From NCBI RefSeq assembly GCF_963921235.1, contig NC_086097.1, positions 58,528,001 to 58,592,000 of the forward strand: DNA of 64,000 bases, read 5' to 3'. Shown here piece after piece: positions 15,790-34,117 of this stretch; position 1 is the stretch's first letter, and the number at the start of each line of letters is the position of its first letter. The translations under genes and the position numbers were made by a program. The notes below the pieces were generated by a model. The model saw only the letters and a list, made by a program, of their open reading frames with translations, searched no databases and was not told where the DNA came from. Source of the stretch: Mobula hypostoma (lineage: Eukaryota).

Positions 15790-17095
15790 TCATGACAAGA
15801 TAGGCCCAAGCCAGCATGGTTTCATGAAGTGAAGATCCTGCCTCACCAACCCGTTGGAATCTTTTTGAGGTAATATCAAATGAGATCGATAAGGGAGAGG
15901 CTGTGATTGTTGTGTATTTGGATTTTCAAAAGGCCTTCGATAAGGTGCTGCGTAATAAGATAAGAGCCCATGGAATTACAGGAAAGATATTGGAATGGGT
16001 GGAGCATTGGCTGATGGGCAGAAAGCAAAGGGTGGGAGTAAAGGGATTCTATTCTGATTGGTTGCCAGTTACTACTGGTGTTCCGCAGGGGTCGGTGTTG
16101 GGGCCGCTTCTTTTTACAATGTATATCGATGATTTAGATTATGGATTAAGTGGTTTTGTGGCTAAATTTGCGGATGACACCAAGACAGGTGGAGGAGCAG
16201 GAAGTGTCGAAGAAATGGAAAAGTTGCAGAGCGACTTGGTCAGTTTAGGAGAGTGGGCAAAAAAATGGCAGATTAGATACAATGTTGAGAAATGTATGGT
16301 TGTACATCTTGGAAGAAGAAATAATCAGGCAGATTATTATTTAGATGGGGAGAAAATTCAAATATCAGAAGTGCAAAGGGACCCGGGGGTCCTCGTGCAG
16401 GATACCCTAAAGGTTAACCACCAGGCTGGATTGGCAGTAAGGAAAGTGAATGCTATGTTGGCATTCATTTCAAGAGGAATAGTGTATAAGAGTAAGGAGG
16501 TGTTGACGAGGCTCTATGGGGCATTAGTGAGACCTCATTTGGAATACTGTGTGCAGTTTTGGGCCCCCTATCTTAAAAGGGATGTTCTGATGTTGGAGAG
16601 AGTTCAGAGAAGATTTAGGAGGATGATTCCTGGAATGCAGGGGCTAACATACGAGAAGTGTTTGTCGGCTCTTGGACTGTATTCATTAGAGTATAGAAGA
16701 ATGAGAGGGGGTTTCATAGAAACATTTCGAATGTTGAAAGGGTTGGACAGAGTAGGTGTGGAAAGGCTGTTTCCCTTGGTGGGTGAGTCCAGGACAAGAG
16801 GCCACAGTCTTAGAATTAGAGGGTACCCATTTAAAACAGAGATGAGGAGAAATTTTTTTAGCCAGAGGATCATGGATTTATGGAATTCGTTGCCACATAC
16901 AGCAGTGGAGGTCCGATTATTGAGGGTGTTTAAGGAGGAGATTGATAGGTATCTAATTAGTCAGGGTATCAAGGGATACAGGGAAAAAGTGGGCAACTAG
17001 AACTAGATGGGAGAATAGTTTAGCTCATAGTGGAGTGGCGGAGCAGACTCGATGGGCTGAATGGCCTACTTCTGCTCCTTTGTCTTGGTGATCTG
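15790..17095 (+). mobile_element. CR1 LINE, 5'-truncated, RT domain largely open (ORF 15903-17000)
   Basis: VYLDFQKAFDKV, GVPQGSVLGPLLF, FADDTK, LVRPHLEYCVQFW, RTRGHSL, CR1 3' UTR. Confidence 0.93.
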
Positions 17096-19138: not shown

Positions 19139-20413
19139 TTAAAGGCTGGTGTCTGCAGTCTCTGATTTGGCCATGGTAGGCTCAGGCATCCTGTTGGGTG
19201 GTCCATCCCTGCAGAAAAGCACAGCTGGATTTTTACAGGCCCACATCACGACATCTCCATTTGCAGGGCTAGAAGAAGACATTCTGCTACCAGCCCCTTG
19301 CCGACTTACATAGCGGTCCCTTAACCTGTCTGCCTGACTCCTAATGTCATGGTCCTGGTTCTGCCTAGACAAGTAGGCAGCTATATTTCTAGTCCTGTAA
19401 CCATCTTCCCTTTTTCTTCCCAAAAGCATGGAGATGTTGGGGTTCCTGGTAGCATAGATTAAGGGATTGAGGGCACCATTAGCCCAGGCCAGCCAGATAG
19501 CCACAGTGTCCATGATGGGGGTGAAATGGAAGTTTCCAGTGGCTGTGATGATTCCCATGACGCAATAAGGACCCCAGCAGCAGATGATAAAGACGATCAT
19601 TATCAGTACTGTGGTGGCTGTCCTCATTTCACTGTAGAAGCGCAGCAGATGGGCATATGTAGTGACTGGGCGGACTCGGATCTCTGACAGCCTCACTGTC
19701 TTACAGATGTTGTAGTGACAGAAGCACATCAGTGAGAAGGGCAACAGGTAGCAGGTGACAATCAAGGCGATGCTGTACGCAGTGCCCATACGGGAAGTGC
19801 CCGAGTGGAAGATGTACATGCAGTGGTAGAAGCCCTTCTTATGAATAACCTGCTGTCCTGGGGCTTGAAACAAGAGATACCAGGGGAAAGAGAAAATGAA
19901 GGCCGTCAGCCAGACGGCGGCCAAGAGCTGCGCGGCCAGACGCCTGCCCATCTTTTCTTGCGGCTGTCTGACGATCGCGTAGTAGCGGTCGAAGGAGATG
20001 AGGGTCATGGTGAGGGTAGAGATGATCCCGAAGCACGAATTGAAGAAACCATTGGCCACGCAGAAGCGGTCCCCAAAGATCCAGACACCGTCTTGGCTGA
20101 AGAGCATGATGAAGGAGAAGGGCACACAGAGCAGGGCAGTGAGCAGGTCGGACAATGACAGGGACATGATGAAGGCGTTAGTCACAGTCCGCAGCTGCCG
20201 GTGTTTGACGATCACCGCAATCACCGCCGCGTTGCCCAGGCTCGACAACAGAAAGATGAGCAAAAGGAGCAGAGCCTTGGAAGCTACGGCCACACCGTGG
20301 AGTAGAGACCCGACGTCGGTCTGGCCGCCCGCTCGCTCCGGCAGCGCTGCTCCGCTGTAGTTGCCGAGCGCCGTGCCGTTGCTCAGCACCGCAGCCCCGG
20401 TAGGCAGATCCAT
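19139..20413 (-). CDS. GPR135: G protein-coupled receptor 135 (class A orphan GPCR), single coding exon, 424 aa
   Basis: Intact ORF with 7 hydrophobic segments, GN in TM1, LSLSD in TM2, SFDRYY, CWGP and NPLIY motifs, and the GPR135-like segment [29 protein letters not shown]. The first in-frame ATG is at 20413; the ORF-track start at 20434 is GTG and an in-frame TGA lies at 20452-20450. Syntenic with L3HYPDH/JKAMP as in human. Confidence 0.95.
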
Positions 20414-20800
20414 GGACCCGAATGGCGCGTCCACCCAAAACTCCGCACATCACTGGGGCCGCCACTGCGGCGAGCGGTCCCTGCGGCCGCTTGGTTGGGC
20501 CACGGACCTCTCGCCCCCGGTTCCCGCGCTGCCTTACCGACGCCCTTTCAGCTGTCCATTTTCTGTGCAACATCTCCCCGCGGTAGCGCTGTTACCTCGC
20601 TCGGAAGCCGGCGCAACCGCCTGCGGTTACAAGTGCTAGCCTTTCAGCACATATCATCACCAGCGCACTCAGTGTCATCCTCCGGCTCCCGAGCCACACG
20701 TGTCCCACTCCGCCTCACTTCCGCTCACGATCTCCAAGCACCGTGGCGCGTACCGCCCTTGTCAGGGTATCAGCGGCTGCACCCAGTAACACCGACCTCT
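19900..20800. promoter_or_regulatory. CpG island over the GPR135 5' end/promoter
   Basis: Sharp rise in GC and CpG content relative to AT-rich flanks; ETS-like CACTTCCG near 20716-20723. Confidence 0.7.
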
Positions 20801-23057: not shown

Positions 23058-23183
23058 TTATCGAAGAAGAAACCCATCTTTGAGAATGTCATCATCTTCG
23101 GCATAGAAGTTTGCTGTTCCTGTGTAATGTGCTTGTCCTGATATTTCCACTATAACAGCTTTGAAATTGCCACATTTTGTTTC
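23058..23183 (-). CDS. L3HYPDH: L3HYPDH coding exon 5 (terminal)
   Basis: ttttcag acceptor; ETKCGNFKAVIVEISGQAHYTGTANFYAEDDDILKDGFLLR-TAA. Total spliced CDS is 1038 nt = 345 aa with no frameshift or internal stop. Confidence 0.95.
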   Translation of the reverse strand, partial: ETKCGNFKAVIVEISGQAHYTGTANFYAEDDDILKDGFLLR

Positions 23184-23302: not shown

Positions 23303-23440
23303 CTCAACAGCTTTTCCTGTGAATAATGAGCCTGTTGGACCACTTTGAAATGTCCTACTCTGATTCAGCAGAACAAATCCTTTATGATACTGCAATGCAA
23401 CACGAGCAGTCACACCTGATCCACAAGGACTTCTGTCGAC
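23303..23440 (-). CDS. L3HYPDH: L3HYPDH coding exon 4 (second catalytic residue is Cys264, not Thr)
   Basis: AG/GT bounded, 138 nt; VDRSPCGSGVTARVALQYHKGFVLLNQSRTFQSGPTGSLFTGKAVE; TGT codon at 23425-23423. Confidence 0.95.
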
Positions 23441-23854: not shown

Positions 23855-23977
23855 CTGAGCATCTGCAAAAACACAGATGTTTGCCGTTGGTTCTTCAGAA
23901 AATGCATCTTTGCCATCAGTTATTATAGTGCCATAGAGGAAAGCAAGATCCTCACTATCAGGGTGGTGCAGCTTGAC
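23855..23977 (-). CDS. L3HYPDH: L3HYPDH coding exon 3
   Basis: AG/GT bounded, 123 nt; VKLHHPDSEDLAFLYGTIITDGKDAFSEEPTANICVFADAQ. Confidence 0.95.
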
Positions 23978-24924: not shown

Positions 24925-25094
24925 CTGTGCTTTCACAGCATTAGTTACAGTTACTGCTGCATCTACAAGGTCTCGTGTCCTGGAGGAACAAACATCCAAA
25001 CCAAAACAATCTGCACTCACGAACGCATAAAAAGCACCTCCATATGCAACATCCACCACAACCTTGCCATGTCCTGGTAGATCAATAGGAATAT
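24925..25094 (-). CDS. L3HYPDH: L3HYPDH coding exon 2
   Basis: tttcag acceptor and gtgcgt donor; 170 nt; (D)IPIDLPGHGKVVVDVAYGGAFYAFVSA...NAVKAQ in frame with exon 1. Confidence 0.95.
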
Positions 25095-26748: not shown

Positions 26749-27229
26749 CTGTGGCGAAGACGAAGGCCGGGACGCTGTGGAAGCGGACACGTCCGCTCTT
26801 GCCCTGGTCGTACTGAACGTAAGCTCGGACGAGGCCGCACGGACAGTGGATGTTGACTTGTGTTTCAGGGGAGTTGGGTTCGGCGATCAAGCCGTAATCC
26901 AGGGCGTAGCGGCCGAGAGCCAGGACGGCGTGCCCGCACATGGTGCTATAGCCCTGGTTGTGCATGAAGAGGACGCCGAGGTGGGCGTCGGGCTTCTCCG
27001 AGCCAACTAGCAGCGCGCCATACATGTCGCGGTGGCCCCGGGGCTCGAAGAGCAAGAGCCGCCTCAGCCCGTCCAGCTGGTCGCGCACGTAGCGCCGCTT
27101 GCTTAGGATGTCGTGGCCGAGGACGGGCGGGAAGCCCCCGGTGACGATGCGCAGTGGCTCGCCGCCCGTGTGCATATCCAGCACCGAGATCCCCGCACCC
27201 GCGCCCGTCGGCGCCCGGTCGAGCGCCAT
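26749..27229 (-). CDS. L3HYPDH: L3HYPDH (proline racemase family) coding exon 1
   Basis: MALDR...DMHTGGEPLRIV...EPRGHRDMYGA...YSTMCGHA (catalytic Cys98, 26938-26936)...SVPAFVFAT. GT donor at 26748-26747; 481 nt, phase 1. Confidence 0.95.
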
Positions 27230-27361
27230 TGATTCCCCGCACCCAGCTGACGACCGGAGGCAAAGGTTAGCCGGAAATGGGAGTCTGTGTTCCGGGTCGG
27301 GACCGCGGCCCGTTTCGAGTGGCGTTTTGGTTGGCAGTCGAGTGGTTTGCTGGGCTCCACC
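27230..27361. promoter_or_regulatory. Bidirectional CpG-island promoter shared by L3HYPDH and JKAMP
   Basis: 132 bp between divergent ATGs inside a CpG-rich island (about 26750-27440); opposed ETS-type cores CCGGAA (27271-27276) and TTCCGG (27290-27295). Confidence 0.8.
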
Positions 27362-27365
27362 ATGG
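27362..27365 (+). CDS. JKAMP: JKAMP coding exon 1 (ATGG only)
   Basis: ccaccATGG|gtaagc: strong Kozak context directly followed by a consensus donor. Phase 1 matches exon 2 (G+AT = Asp). Confidence 0.85.
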
Positions 27366-28047
27366 GTAAGCCCGCGATATACGGGTCGGCTCTGTTCTGT
27401 GGGACCGCCGGGCCCGATTATCCCGGCGGTGGTTGGTGCGTATGTAATGATGATTAGGCCATACTTGGAGTATTGCATTCAGTTGTGATCGCCCCCATTA
27501 TAGGAACGATGTGAAGACGGGTGAGGATGCAGGTTCTCTAGACCCGCTGTTTTAAAATTTATTTCCAGTTCCCTCCGATGGAAGTTGGGTGGGCGGTTAC
27601 GTTGATTGGGGCTGGAGTTAATGACTGAGCCTGCTGTTGGCAATTTTCTCAGGGAGGAAGGGAGGTAGAGATGGCAGGAAGCGACGAACGAGAGGGGGTA
27701 TTGGGTGATGGGTCTGGAGGAAGGCGAATGGCAGGTTTCTGGGAAACGGAAAAATAAGCGGCCGATTAAGGATTGTAGTGGTTTATTGTCCAGTGGTGAA
27801 GGCAGTAGACAGGATTTAAATAAGAGAAGGAAGGTATTGTTACATTTTGAATGTAGACCTGTTTCTGATATCAATCCAAATAGACTAACTAAAGATTTGT
27901 GTATTGTATTTAATACTTCAGTAATATTGTAAATATATTCTTCGATTAAGTATTCTTTGTTTACATAATACATTAAGGTTATTCGTAAGAGGTACGTTAT
28001 TAGCATATGTCGTTACACCACCACGTTATATATGAGCACATTGCTTA

Positions 28048-28605
28048 GAACATAGAAATCTACACATTACAGGCCCTTCGGCCCACAGTGTTGTACCTAC
28101 TCTAGAAACTGCCTAGAGTTTCCCTAGCATATAGCCCTCTATTTTTCTAAGCTCCAAGTACTTATCTAAGAGGCTCTTAAAAGACCCTATTGTATCCGCT
28201 TCCACCACCACCTCCGGCAGTGTATTCCACTCACCCACCACTCTCCGTGTGAAGAACTTACCCCTGACACCCCCCCCCCCGTACATATTTCCAAGCACCT
28301 TAAAACTATGCCTCCTCATGTTAGCCGATTCAGTCCTGGGATAGTGCCTCTGGTTATCCACCTGATCAATACCCCTCATCATTTTATACACCACTATCAG
28401 GTCACCTGTCATCCTCCATCTCTCCAAGGAGAAAAGGCCAAGTTCACTGAACCTATTCTCATAAGGTATGCCCTCCAATCCAGACAACATCTTTGTAAAT
28501 CTCCTCTGCATTCTCTTTATAATATCCACATCCTTCCTGTAGTGAGGTGACCAGAAATGAACACAGTACTCCAAGTGGGGTCTGACCAAGATCTTATATA
28601 GCTGG
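28048..28605 (-). mobile_element. CR1 LINE 3' fragment inside the Gypsy LTR
   Basis: ORF 28113-28589 VRPHLEYCVHFWSPHYRKD...; reverse ttctatgttct tail. Confidence 0.9.
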
Positions 28606-31589: not shown

Positions 31590-34117
31590 CCTTATACCAT
31601 CCGCAAAAAAGTAGCCAGAGAGCTAGATTGCATAGAGGCTAAGTGAATTCTTTCCAACGTTGAGTGGAGCCCATGGGCGGCACCAGTGGTTCCTATAGCC
31701 AAGAAGGATGGGTCTATCAGGATCTGGTGATTTTAAGGTCACTATCAACCCAGTACTGAAAGTAGATCAGCACTGTCTGCCGAGGATAGAGGATTTCTTT
31801 GCAAACCTTTCTGGAGAGAAACACTTAGCAAAGTGGACTCAGCTGAGATCTACCTACAGGTGGAGGCGGAACAAGAGTCCTAAGTGTTTCTCACCATAAA
31901 CACCCACAAAGGGCTGTATTGCGATAATAGGCTTATTTTTGGATTAGTATCTGCACCCGCACCCTGGCAGAGAGCTAAGGACCAGGTACTGCAAGGCTAT
32001 CCAGACACTCGGTGTTACGTAGGTGATGTCATTGTGACTGGTAAGAATGACATTTCAAGAGTGCTAAAAAGAGTAGAAAATTGTGGGTTCAGAGCACAGT
32101 GCAACAACTGTGAATTCTTTAAACCAATCATTACTAACGAGGATTACACAAGTGTGCTAAGAAAATTCAAGCAACGGCAGGTGCTGCAAGACCAAAGGAC
32201 ATGTCACATTTGTGGTCCTTTTTATGATTTATCAATTACTATAACAGGTTCCTGGAAACTTGGCTGCTGTGCTCTGCCCCTTTAACTCATTACAGATCGG
32301 TAAGAAATGGCAATGGACAAAGCAGTGTGAGGTTGCTTTCCAAAAGGCAAAGGAGATGGTGATGGCAGACACTGCACTCACACGTTATGATCCACATCCT
32401 CCTGTGAAGCTTGCTGGTAATGCCTCGCCTTGTTGTCATGTCACATGTTATGAGCCATGAAAGTGAACACTCCATAACATTTGCATCATGTACCCATACT
32501 GCTGCAGAGAAAAATTACACATAGATTGACAGAGAGGTCTTGAGTCTGGTTTGGGATGTAAAACCTTTCAACGAGTACCTGTGTGGTAGAGAGTTTACCC
32601 TCATTATTCATCATCAACCCCTTCCATCCATTTTCAATCCATAGAAAAGTGTTCCATCAGTGACAAGAGGACATCAAATGATGGAAATGTTGATGGATTG
32701 CCCTATTTACCCTGAATTGGAAATAGCTGAAAAATTTACAAAACACGTCACTCCTCTTGAAGTATTCTTGCTAATGCAACTGGAAAGTCTCCTCGTTATG
32801 GCAGAGATGATCCAAAGGGAAACCAAAGAAGACCCCACACTGTCTCAGGTCTACAAGACAACTCAAAATAGCTGGAATATGTAGCAGAGATTCCAGTTCC
32901 CTCATTTTCACCAGCATTGGGATGAACCTGCCCTTGATGGGGGTTGCCTTATGTGGGGATTGTGAATTGTACCATCCAACCTGAGAGCTAAGGTGTTGGA
33001 GAAGCTACATGCTGGTCAGCTGGGCATGGTCAAAATGAAAACATTGGCTCAAAGTTTTGTCTGGTGGCCTGGGATAGATCAGATCGAGCAGCTTGCCATG
33101 CACTGATCAGGATGCCAACACATCCAGAAGGTGCCAAGAGCGGCTCCTTTCCATCCTTTGAATACTGGCAGAGTATTCAAGCGGAATTTCCCAGACCATT
33201 CGTGGACACAAATTTCGTGGTAGTAGAGGATGCAGCTACAAAGTGGCCGTAAGTGTTCCCAACAACCTCCACTACAACCTCACACACTGATGTGTTGAGA
33301 AGCCTTTTCTCAAGGACTGGTGTTCCAGAACACTTAGTCAGTGATAAGAGACCACAGTTAGTTGTGCATCAGTTTCAGTCATTCCTGAAAATTCATGGAG
33401 TAAGACAGGTTACATATGCACTGTACCACCTAGCTACAGATGGTTTGCTAGAAAGGTTTGTCCAGAGTTTAAGGAACACACTGAGAGCAATGCCAGCAGA
33501 ACACACTACACTGATTGAATCAGAAGCTCACAAATTTTTTCTTTGTATATCGCAATGCAGTACACTCCGCAACCAACAACTCACCAGCTATGCTGTTCCT
33601 GGGTCATCCCTTATGCTCACGCTTGGATCTCCTCAAATCCAATCTGAGAATGAGTACTCAGGACAAATAGCTGAGACAAATTGAGGGGTCCTCAAATGAG
33701 GTTTAATGCTTTACCCCTGGTCAAGCAGTCCTGGTGAGGGACTACACAGATGATCAAAAATGGGTACTTGGAAAGATTAAGGACAGACGTGGACCACTCT
33801 CCTGCACAGATGAGATTGTGTCTGATGTCATCTGGAGGCGACACATCGATCAGTTGGGCAGAGTCAAATGTTAGAGAAGAAAGCTGTCCAAAGCTGCAGA
33901 ACCACTTCCTGTAGTCTCAGACTCAGCTCCTACAATCACCATGAAGGAGGCCCCAGAACCTGAGATCGTTTCACAGCCACAAGTCTCTCCTACCAAGCAG
34001 AGAGACAACCAGCTCCCCCACCGACCCCCAGTCGGGAAAGATGTTTAAAATTTGATATGCTGTGATGTGTATAAATTAGTTGTATTATATAGTATACTAT
34101 GTGCTTGTGTGTGTATA

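What the first reader, a model, noticed from the sequence alone, without database searches (positions are those of the whole stretch)
23303..23440. L3HYPDH orthologue with a Cys/Cys active site: predicted natural vertebrate proline racemase / hydroxyproline epimerase
Seen in sequence: exon 4 reads VDRSPCGSGVTARVA (TGT at 23425-23423, Cys264) and exon 1 reads STMCGH (Cys98). The spliced 345-aa frame is intact with canonical splice sites. Established knowledge: proline racemases and hydroxyproline 2-epimerases use two cysteines (MCGH and DRSPCGxGxxAxxA), and this sequence fits both motifs fully. Human L3HYPDH/C14orf149 has Cys104/Thr273 (DRSPTGSG) and dehydrates trans-3-hydroxy-L-proline; its T273C mutant was reported to become a 3-hydroxyproline epimerase. 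TGT differs from every Thr codon at two or more positions, so a single base-call error cannot explain it. Synteny between GPR135 and JKAMP and the exon structure indicate the true orthologue, not a contaminant. Inference: this lineage either retained or reverted to racemase/epimerase chemistry, so it may make or recycle D-proline or cis-3-hydroxy-D-proline, and annotation as a dehydratase would be wrong. Tyr70 (DMYGA) sits at the aromatic position associated with proline-preferring rather than 4-hydroxyproline enzymes. I cannot verify from here whether this substitution has been described before.
Basis: partly seen in the sequence, partly recalled or inferred. Interest (0 to 1): 0.92.

Follow-up and report, generated by a model that had tools for sequence, protein, structure and literature searches.

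The report
Cartilaginous-fish L3HYPDH with two catalytic cysteines
This devil-ray gene is the true counterpart of human 3-hydroxyproline dehydratase, but it carries, as every shark, ray, skate and chimaera checked does, the one active-site change (Thr to Cys) that in the laboratory gave the human enzyme epimerase activity, so a whole vertebrate class may handle collagen-derived 3-hydroxyproline differently.

Summary
Window 27229-23058 (minus strand) holds a 5-exon, 345-aa L3HYPDH gene with GT-AG at every intron. It has Cys98 (MCGH), Cys264 (DRSPCGSG, TGT at 23425-23423) and Tyr70. The product is identical to the RefSeq model of Mobula hypostoma, and the gene lies between JKAMP and GPR135.

Cys264 is not peculiar to this genome. 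All 24 cartilaginous-fish species retrieved carry it. Of 68 full-length bony-vertebrate sequences, 66 have Thr. Among 345 positions this is the only fixed difference between the two groups. A second, nearly fixed one is Gln92 against Glu.

Thr also holds in a sponge, hemichordates, most echinoderms and the closest bacteria. Cys recurs in bivalves, some amphioxus paralogues and a sea cucumber. A reversion in the chondrichthyan stem is therefore most parsimonious, though no cyclostome sequence could be obtained.

The rest of the pocket matches the human dehydratase. The best prediction is a trans-3-hydroxy-L-proline 2-epimerase, probably still with some dehydratase activity. This rests on the human Thr-to-Cys mutant and on Pseudomonas LhpL. 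No activity was tested.

The parts
26749..27229 (-). L3HYPDH exon 1 (start codon at 27229-27227). Carries Tyr70 (27022-27020), Gln92 (26956-26954), catalytic Cys98 (26938-26936) and Cys129/Cys131.
   Evidence: tblastn of Hemitrygon L3HYPDH against the window; GT donor; codon coordinates.
24925..25094 (-). L3HYPDH exon 2
   Evidence: AG acceptor, GT donor.
23855..23977 (-). L3HYPDH exon 3. Carries Phe254 (23869-23867) and Gln258 (23857-23855).
23303..23440 (-). It begins VDRSPCGSGVTAR.
23423..23425 (-). TGT codon of Cys264, the second catalytic position (Thr273 in human).
   Evidence: The aligned column is Cys in all chondrichthyans and Thr in 66 of 68 bony vertebrates.
26954..26956 (-). CAG codon of Gln92. 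This is the second chondrichthyan-specific replacement (Glu in 64 of 68 bony vertebrates; human residue 98).
23058..23183 (-). L3HYPDH exon 5, including the TAA stop codon.
19139..20434 (-). GPR135-like single-exon GPCR, the downstream neighbour (synteny marker).
   Evidence: ORF; Pfam 7tm_1 E=3.9e-49; a 7tm_1 gene is called downstream of L3HYPDH in the public record.
27362..27457 (+). Start of JKAMP (first coding exon), head-to-head with L3HYPDH. The two start codons are 132 bp apart.
   Evidence: A gene with PF05571 (JAMP) ends 132 bp from the L3HYPDH CDS in locus L003; ORF. The 3' end given is the in-frame stop, not a mapped splice site.

Best explanation
[quoted passage not shown] Its second catalytic residue is Cys264 instead of Thr. 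That state is fixed in all cartilaginous fishes sampled. It most probably arose by a two-nucleotide reversion (ACN to TGY) in the chondrichthyan stem, together with Glu92 to Gln.

Proposed mechanism (inferred, not shown): Cys98 sits on the face of the alpha-hydrogen of the L-substrate and abstracts it from trans-3-hydroxy-L-proline, as in the dehydratase. In Thr-type enzymes nothing can reprotonate the opposite face, so the intermediate loses the 3-hydroxyl and becomes pyrroline-2-carboxylate. With a thiol at position 264, reprotonation from the opposite face becomes possible and gives cis-3-hydroxy-D-proline.

The enzyme is therefore predicted to be a 3-hydroxyproline 2-epimerase, probably bifunctional with residual dehydration. 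Because dehydration is irreversible, net flux in vivo could still end in pyrroline-2-carboxylate and proline.
For: Shown here:
- Gene model, codon and synteny.
- Identity to the RefSeq protein of M. hypostoma.
- Cys264 and Gln92 are present in all 24 chondrichthyan species retrieved: 9 rays, skates and sawfish, 14 sharks and Callorhinchus.
- Position 264 is the only fixed difference between 9 chondrichthyan and 68 bony-vertebrate sequences over 345 positions, while 156 positions are shared and conserved.
- The chondrichthyan clade has 99% support and ordinary branch lengths, so there is no sign of decay.
- A spliced skate mRNA contig carries the TGT codon.
- The residues described as ligand-contacting or closing the human enzyme (Asp74, Tyr76, Met103, Cys104, Cys137, Tyr192, Tyr241, Gln267, Arg270, Ser275; PMC9309405) are all identical in the ray. 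Residue 98 is changed (Gln92 for Glu).

From the literature:
- The human Thr-to-Cys mutant shows 3-hydroxyproline epimerase activity (PMC3958920).
- P. aeruginosa LhpL, which has Cys at the second site, converts trans-3-hydroxy-L-proline to cis-3-hydroxy-D-proline and also dehydrates it weakly (PMC5144071 supplement).
- The single Cys of the dehydratase is proposed to act as both base and acid in a syn-elimination (PMC4113996).

For reversion: Thr is found in the sponge Sycon, two hemichordates, three of four echinoderms, Lingula, a nemertean, the closest alphaproteobacterial homologues and archaeal 6R76.
Against: No enzyme activity was measured, and the prediction rests on one engineered human mutant and one distant bacterial enzyme. 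I could not read Visser 2012 itself, so I do not know how much dehydratase activity the mutant kept or whether proline was tested.

The column has switched between Thr and Cys at least 6 to 9 times in animals. This could mean the exchange is functionally mild. Proline-racemase superfamily members are often promiscuous, and catalytic pairs do not map cleanly onto function: a Ser/Cys enzyme acts as a 4-hydroxyproline epimerase and a Ser/Thr enzyme as a dehydratase (PMC4113996).

The direction of change is not proven. No cyclostome sequence was retrieved, amphioxus has both states, and ancestral reconstruction was not available. The link between Gln92 and Cys264 is not statistically supported outside vertebrates (independent pairs, median p 0.5).
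Confidence: 0.55

Rival explanations
1. It is functionally unchanged. [quoted passage not shown] Any epimerisation is a minor side reaction that irreversible dehydration pulls through to the same product.
For: Every other pocket and closure residue equals the human dehydratase. The best NCBIfam model is T3HypD, with a score profile almost the same as the Thr-type coelacanth protein. Thr and Cys have exchanged repeatedly in animal lineages, even between close amphioxus paralogues and two Haliotis species. LhpL, with a second-site Cys, keeps dehydratase activity.
Against: The human Thr-to-Cys mutant is reported to gain epimerase activity. LhpL's main visible product was the D-epimer, and its dehydration was about 6000-fold weaker than that of a dedicated dehydratase. 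Cys is strictly kept in all 24 species, including a chimaera, alongside a second active-site-loop change (Gln92). That pattern looks like selection for Cys, not drift.
Confidence: 0.3
2. This is the reader's headline: the enzyme is a proline racemase that interconverts L- and D-proline, or a broad proline/hydroxyproline racemase like archaeal TlProR.
For: It has a Cys/Cys pair with intact MCGH and DRSPCG motifs. It has Phe254 at 'site 5', as proline racemases do. TlProR shows that one active site can take proline, 3-hydroxyproline and 4-hydroxyproline (PMC4364671).
Against: Site 1 is Tyr70, as in all dehydratases, whereas Phe is typical of proline racemases. Positions 268-269 are Val-Thr, as in the dehydratases, not Thr-Ser or Thr-Thr. 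Phe254 is also present in the dehydratases, so it does not discriminate. The motifs alone cannot separate racemases from epimerases (PMC4417235). The NCBIfam proline-racemase model scores 70 bits below the dehydratase model. In the tree the protein sits deep inside the T3HypD clade. Some bivalve paralogues have acquired the racemase-like set (Phe70, Gly or Ala at 92, Thr-Thr at 268-269), but the ray has not.
Confidence: 0.1
3. The Cys codon or the gene model is a sequencing, assembly or annotation artefact, or the gene is a decaying pseudogene.
For: None found.
Against: Independent genomes of 24 species agree. A spliced mRNA contig from a skate carries TGT. The reading frame and splice sites are intact. 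Identity between ray and chimaera is 84%, and branch lengths are ordinary.
Confidence: 0.01

Closest known systems
[quoted passage not shown]
   Same: It is the orthologue. It has the same neighbours (JKAMP and a GPR135-like GPCR), the same Pfam domain and a near full-length alignment (557 bits, E=1.5e-166, using the 95%-identical Hemitrygon protein). It shares Tyr76, Met103-Cys104, Cys137, Tyr192, Tyr241, Gln267, Arg270 and Ser275.
   Different: Thr273 is replaced by Cys264, and residue 98 (Glu in the deposited human sequence) by Gln92.
Engineered human L3HYPDH Thr273Cys mutant (Visser et al. 2012, as quoted in PMC3958920)
   Same: It has the same catalytic pair (Cys/Cys) on the same vertebrate scaffold. 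The chondrichthyan protein is in effect its natural counterpart.
   Different: The natural protein has been under selection in this state across cartilaginous-fish evolution and carries the extra Glu-to-Gln change at position 92. Its activity is unmeasured.
Pseudomonas aeruginosa LhpL (PA1255), a Ser-Cys type member of the proline racemase superfamily
   Same: It has Cys at the second catalytic position. It acts only on trans-3-hydroxy-L-proline, giving cis-3-hydroxy-D-proline plus weak dehydration. This is the behaviour predicted here.
   Different: Its first catalytic residue is Ser, not Cys.
Proline racemases (T. cruzi PRAC 1W61; Acetoanaerobium sticklandii ProR 7PB3) and archaeal TlProR
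   Same: They share the fold, the Cys/Cys pair, the MCGH and DRSPCG motifs, and Phe at site 5.
   Different: They match the ray-type protein at only 192-243 bits. They have Phe rather than Tyr at site 1, Gly-Thr-Gly-Thr-Ser after the second Cys where the ray has Gly-Ser-Gly-Val-Thr, and they fall in a different clade.
Cys/Cys 'T3HPD-like' proteins of bivalves, amphioxus, Holothuria and the fungus Paraglomus
   Same: They belong to the same T3HypD clade and show the same Thr-to-Cys state at the second site. All are annotated automatically as dehydratases, and I found no biochemical study of any of them.
   Different: These are independent switches, often in lineage-specific paralogues. Some have further racemase-like changes that the ray lacks.

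Membership tests
Proline racemase superfamily (Pfam PF05544) | Full-length Pro_racemase domain | tested here: met
   PF05544 E=2.1e-108, residues 16-342 against profile positions 1-324 of 325.
Proline racemase superfamily (Pfam PF05544) | MCGH motif with the first catalytic Cys, and a DRSPxGxG motif | tested here: met
   STMCGH (Cys98) and DRSPCGSG (Cys264).
Vertebrate L3HYPDH orthologue group | Conserved position between JKAMP and GPR135, and placement inside the vertebrate clade | tested here: met
   JAMP-domain gene upstream and 7tm_1 gene downstream. Vertebrate clade 100% and chondrichthyan clade 99% SH-aLRT.
[quoted passage not shown] | Thr at the second catalytic position (the classification used in PMC3958920, PMC4141209 and PMC4364671) | tested here: not met
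   Cys264, codon TGT.
[quoted passage not shown] | Best whole-sequence match is to the dehydratase model | tested here: inconclusive
   NCBIfam NF045511 is the top hit at 351 bits, but this is below the equivalog cutoff of 540. The Thr-type coelacanth protein is also below it, at 363 bits.
[quoted passage not shown] | Dehydration of trans-3-hydroxy-L-proline to pyrroline-2-carboxylate | not testable with these tools
   Needs a recombinant enzyme assay.
Proline racemase (EC 5.1.1.4) | Cys/Cys catalytic pair | tested here: met
   Cys98 and Cys264.
Proline racemase (EC 5.1.1.4) | Phe at substrate site 1 (the DMFG position; R1 of Goytia et al., as described in PMC4364671 and PMC4417235) | tested here: not met
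   Tyr70 (DMYG), as in the human dehydratase. Phe is seen in AsProR and in three of the five distant Cys/Cys outgroup sequences.
Proline racemase (EC 5.1.1.4) | Groups with characterised racemases by sequence | tested here: not met
   The proline-racemase model scores 281 bits against 351 for the dehydratase model. In the tree the protein lies inside the T3HypD clade.
4-hydroxyproline 2-epimerase (EC 5.1.1.8) | Site 1 Ser or Val, and site 5 Cys or Tyr (PMC4364671) | tested here: not met
   Tyr70 and Phe254. The HypE models score 123-226 bits.
3-hydroxyproline 2-epimerase activity (human T273C; PaLhpL) | A thiol at the second catalytic position on a 3-hydroxyproline-binding scaffold | tested here: met
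   Cys264 on an otherwise human-like pocket.
3-hydroxyproline 2-epimerase activity (human T273C; PaLhpL) | Formation of cis-3-hydroxy-D-proline from trans-3-hydroxy-L-proline | not testable with these tools
   Needs an enzyme assay or tissue metabolite analysis.

The most novel reading that the evidence does not exclude
Cartilaginous fishes as a class possess an endogenous, cofactor-independent amino-acid epimerase. L3HYPDH was converted in their common ancestor, by Thr264Cys with Glu92Gln, from a dehydratase into a 3-hydroxyproline 2-epimerase with possible activity on proline. They would then make cis-3-hydroxy-D-proline (and perhaps D-proline) from collagen breakdown and route it through D-amino-acid oxidation instead of the pyrroline-2-carboxylate/CRYM route. 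I know of no such enzyme described in a vertebrate. It would also be a natural replicate of a laboratory function switch, and one that has recurred in bivalves, amphioxus and a sea cucumber.
Probability: 0.4. Interest if true: 0.72.

Novelty: new variant of a known kind. Interest (0 to 1): 0.6.

Why it matters
The proline racemase superfamily is a textbook case in which one catalytic residue is held to decide between racemisation or epimerisation (Cys/Cys) and dehydration (Cys/Thr). Here a whole vertebrate class carries, in the orthologue of a characterised human enzyme, exactly the residue swap that gave the human enzyme epimerase activity in vitro, with every other described pocket residue except Gln92 unchanged.

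If the prediction holds, the 'trans-L-3-hydroxyproline dehydratase' annotation of all chondrichthyan entries is wrong or incomplete, and probably also that of bivalve, amphioxus and sea-cucumber entries. Sharks and rays would then be a natural source of D-imino acids.

The repeated Thr/Cys toggling also gives independent evolutionary replicates for studying how a two-base proton shuttle is gained and lost. If the prediction fails, that is informative too, because it would show that the Cys/Thr rule used for annotation is not sufficient.

Tried and rejected
- **Base-call or assembly error:** rejected, because 24 species and a spliced skate mRNA contig agree.
- **Contaminant or paralogue:** rejected on synteny, introns and tree position.
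- **Tyr70 as a marker of proline preference:** rejected, because the same Tyr is present in the human enzyme and in all Thr-type sequences examined.
- **Cyclostome orthologues:** not obtained. All three word-indexed searches list only the best 120 hits, and these were filled by gnathostomes, molluscs or amphioxus plus bacteria. The representative library carries no names.
- **Ancestral state by likelihood:** Only minimum change counts were used.
- **Careful (bootstrap) tree:** did not finish in the time limit, so the quick tree was used.
- **Correlation of Gln92 (or any non-Glu residue) with Cys264 across the family:** suggestive counts only. 28 of 29 Thr-type sequences have Glu against 23 of 43 Cys-type, but the independent-pairs test was not significant.
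- **Visser et al. 2012:** not held in the library, so its content is cited second-hand.
- **Literature searches:** searches for L3HYPDH with shark, for 3-hydroxyproline epimerase, and for proline racemase in bivalves found no description of this substitution.
- **Earlier notes of this scan:** none near this place.
- **Structure prediction:** not run. The sequence matches 7QPO at E=1e-166, and the tool returns no coordinates from which Cys-Cys geometry could be measured.

Full report
**1. The observation**

It begins VDRSPCGSGVTARVA. The codon at 23425-23423 is TGT.

A tblastn of the closest database protein against the window gave five collinear blocks. The exact junctions are 27229-26749, 25094-24925, 23977-23855, 23440-23303 and 23183-23058. 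All four introns are GT-AG. The exons give a 1038-nt frame of 345 codons ending in TAA.

The window has no N.

The spliced product is identical over all 345 residues to XP_062905805.1 of Mobula hypostoma. My model therefore equals the public annotation, and the window is from that genome (chromosome record OY992592.1).

A JAMP-domain gene (JKAMP) lies head-to-head, with 132 bp between the two start codons. A rhodopsin-type GPCR (ORF 19139-20434; Pfam 7tm_1, E=3.9e-49) lies downstream.

**2. How widespread is Cys264?**

A search with exon 1 returned 120 vertebrate proteins. All eleven chondrichthyan entries had DRSPCG. 71 bony-vertebrate entries had DRSPTG, one Sinocyclocheilus copy had Ala, and one unnamed teleost-like transcript had Cys.

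Opening the 90% clusters added more species. Every one has VDRSPCGSG:
- Rays, skates and sawfish: Hemitrygon, Hypanus, two Mobula, Pristis, Narcine, Rhinoraja, Amblyraja, Leucoraja.
- Sharks: Carcharodon, Cetorhinus, two Scyliorhinus, Mustelus, Heterodontus, Stegostoma, two Chiloscyllium, Hemiscyllium, Rhincodon, Heptranchias.
- Chimaera: Callorhinchus.

A 2510-nt Logan contig (SRR11241640), nearest to skates, matches the five window exons contiguously. It is therefore a spliced mRNA, and it carries TGT at this codon. The exon is thus expressed in at least one chondrichthyan.

I aligned 9 chondrichthyan sequences with 68 full-length bony-vertebrate sequences:
- 156 of 345 positions are invariant in chondrichthyans and at least 95% conserved, with the same residue, in bony vertebrates.
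- Exactly one position is invariant in chondrichthyans and at least 95% conserved with a different residue: 264 (Cys against Thr).
- Relaxing the criterion adds one more: 92 (Gln in all chondrichthyans; Glu in 64 of 68 bony vertebrates).

Position 92 corresponds to human residue 98, six residues before the catalytic Cys. It is reported to hydrogen-bond to Gln267 in the open form of the human enzyme (PMC9309405). That paper writes Asp98, but the deposited chain has Glu there.

**3. Direction of change**

The exhaustive representative search and two further named searches sampled the rest of the family.

Thr is found in:
- the sponge Sycon;
- the hemichordates Ptychodera and Saccoglossus (67-69% and 62-65% identical to vertebrates);
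- the echinoderms Amphiura, Anneissia and Acanthaster;
- the brachiopod Lingula, the nemertean Tubulanus and Haliotis cracherodii;
- the closest alphaproteobacterial homologues;
- the archaeal T. litoralis enzyme 6R76.

Cys is found in:
- all 21 full-length bivalve sequences examined, including several paralogues per species;
- Haliotis asinina and Holothuria;
- the fungus Paraglomus;
- several amphioxus paralogues. Other amphioxus paralogues, 80% or more identical to the Cys ones, have Thr.

On an 84-sequence tree built without columns 264 and 92, the vertebrates (100%) and the chondrichthyans (99%) are clades. The character needs at least 9 changes, 6 of them forced by well-supported branches. 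The earliest branches of the dehydratase clade are Thr, and the distant racemase/epimerase-like outgroup is Cys.

The most parsimonious reading is that Thr was ancestral for this clade. This agrees with Watanabe's view that dehydratase activity arose once. On that reading the chondrichthyan Cys is a secondary reversion.

This is not proven. I could not retrieve a cyclostome sequence, the deep animal branches are unresolved, and likelihood reconstruction was not available.

**4. What the active site says**

The residues described as ligand-contacting or closing in the human enzyme are all identical in the ray: Asp74, Tyr76, Met103, Cys104, Cys137, Tyr192, Tyr241, Gln267, Arg270 and Ser275.

Tyr70 is human Tyr76. 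All 29 Thr-type sequences have Tyr. Phe appears only in Cys-type sequences, including three of the five distant outgroups and some bivalve and amphioxus paralogues, and AsProR reads DMFG. PMC4364671 gives Phe at this site as typical of proline racemases.

Phe254 ('site 5') is shared by racemases and dehydratases, so it is uninformative.

Val268-Thr269 after the GSG is the dehydratase pattern. Racemases and several bivalve and amphioxus Cys-type paralogues have Thr-Ser or Thr-Thr.

NCBIfam ranks the dehydratase model first (351 bits) and the proline-racemase model second (281 bits). This is almost the same profile as the Thr-type coelacanth protein. The literature also warns that the two motifs do not separate racemases from epimerases (PMC4417235).

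**5. Mechanism**

Established:
- Racemases and epimerases of this family use two thiols on opposite faces for a 1,1-proton transfer.
- The dehydratase keeps only the first Cys. That Cys abstracts the alpha-proton, and its conjugate acid is proposed to assist departure of the syn 3-hydroxyl (PMC4113996).
- Replacing Thr by Cys in the human enzyme gives 3-hydroxyproline epimerase activity (PMC3958920 quoting Visser 2012).
- P. aeruginosa LhpL has a second-site Cys. It turns trans-3-hydroxy-L-proline into cis-3-hydroxy-D-proline and dehydrates it only weakly.

Inferred: in the ray enzyme, Cys98 deprotonates C2 of trans-3-hydroxy-L-proline, and Cys264 can reprotonate the other face to give the D-epimer, in competition with elimination. 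Gln92 may tune this, but that is speculation.

Because elimination is irreversible, the physiological end product could still be pyrroline-2-carboxylate. This is why the 'unchanged function' rival keeps substantial weight.

**6. Comparison with what is known, and novelty**

The protein is a member of the proline racemase superfamily and of the vertebrate L3HYPDH orthologue group. It fails the defining residue of the Cys-Thr dehydratase type, and it fails the site-1 and clade criteria of proline racemases.

It works most like the human T273C mutant and LhpL. I found no paper describing this substitution in cartilaginous fishes or characterising any animal Cys/Cys member. All such entries are named dehydratase by automatic annotation. 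I rate it a new variant of a known kind.

**7. Verdict**

An epimerase on 3-hydroxyproline is a reasonable, testable prediction (about 0.55, including bifunctional outcomes). Proline racemase is unlikely (about 0.1). Unchanged dehydratase function remains possible (about 0.3). Interest is 0.6.

Noticed in passing
L002:90-1124 (Logan SRR19345908 contig; protein P0107): A teleost transcript, closest to the cichlid Pundamilia (91.6%) and the needlefish Xenentodon (91.0%), also has Cys (TGT) at the second catalytic site on an otherwise Thr-type teleost background with Glu92. It may be an independent Thr-to-Cys switch in a bony fish. It rests on a single RNA-seq assembly, and the species is unknown.
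   Followed up: partly
Proteins P0296, P0306, P0310, P0312, P0315 (Mya, Mactra, Ylistrum and Argopecten paralogues): Some bivalve T3HPD-like paralogues combine Cys/Cys with Phe at site 1, Gly or Ala at position 92 and Thr-Thr after the GSG. This is the pattern of the Phe-type outgroup sequences. They are better candidates for an animal proline racemase than the ray enzyme.
   Followed up: partly
Proteins P0362, P0381, P0434-P0441 (Branchiostoma): Amphioxus species carry several recent paralogues (80% or more identical to each other), some with Thr and some with Cys at the second catalytic site.
   Followed up: partly
L001:484-1527 (GCA_964504425.1, contig CAZDFF010000325.1; protein P0121): An intronless gene, 7 bp upstream of a glycerol-3-phosphate dehydrogenase gene and so apparently prokaryotic, encodes a Thr-type protein 60% identical to ray L3HYPDH. 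In the tree the animal clade was not clearly separated from alphaproteobacterial sequences, which raises the question of an old gene transfer.
   Followed up: no
window 27229-27362: The L3HYPDH and JKAMP start codons face away from each other and are only 132 bp apart. This implies a very compact bidirectional promoter or overlapping 5' UTRs.
   Followed up: no
window 15903-17000 (+), 28113-28589 (-), 27440-27488 (+): A 365-aa ORF has a reverse-transcriptase domain (RVT_1, E=4.6e-15). Two shorter stretches share its C-terminal LVRPHLEYCVxFW-like motif. One of them lies between the start codons of L3HYPDH and... more precisely, just beyond the JKAMP start, within about 260 bp of the L3HYPDH start codon. 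These look like copies of one retroelement family.
   Followed up: partly
window 31884-33684 (+): Broken ORFs carry a weak integrase-core match (rve, E=1e-4, below Pfam's cutoff) and pol-like sequence. This is probably a decayed LTR retrotransposon, lying on the JKAMP side of L3HYPDH.
   Followed up: partly
Protein P0084 (Sinocyclocheilus anshuiensis): One cavefish copy has Ala at the second catalytic site (DRSPAG) and lacks a recognisable MCGH motif in the simple scan. It may be a decaying duplicate in a polyploid carp.
   Followed up: no
PDB 7QPO chain sequence compared with PMC9309405: The paper names residue 98 of human L3HYPDH Asp98 (and in one legend pairs it with 'Asn267'), but the deposited chain has Glu at that position and Gln at 267.
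   Followed up: no
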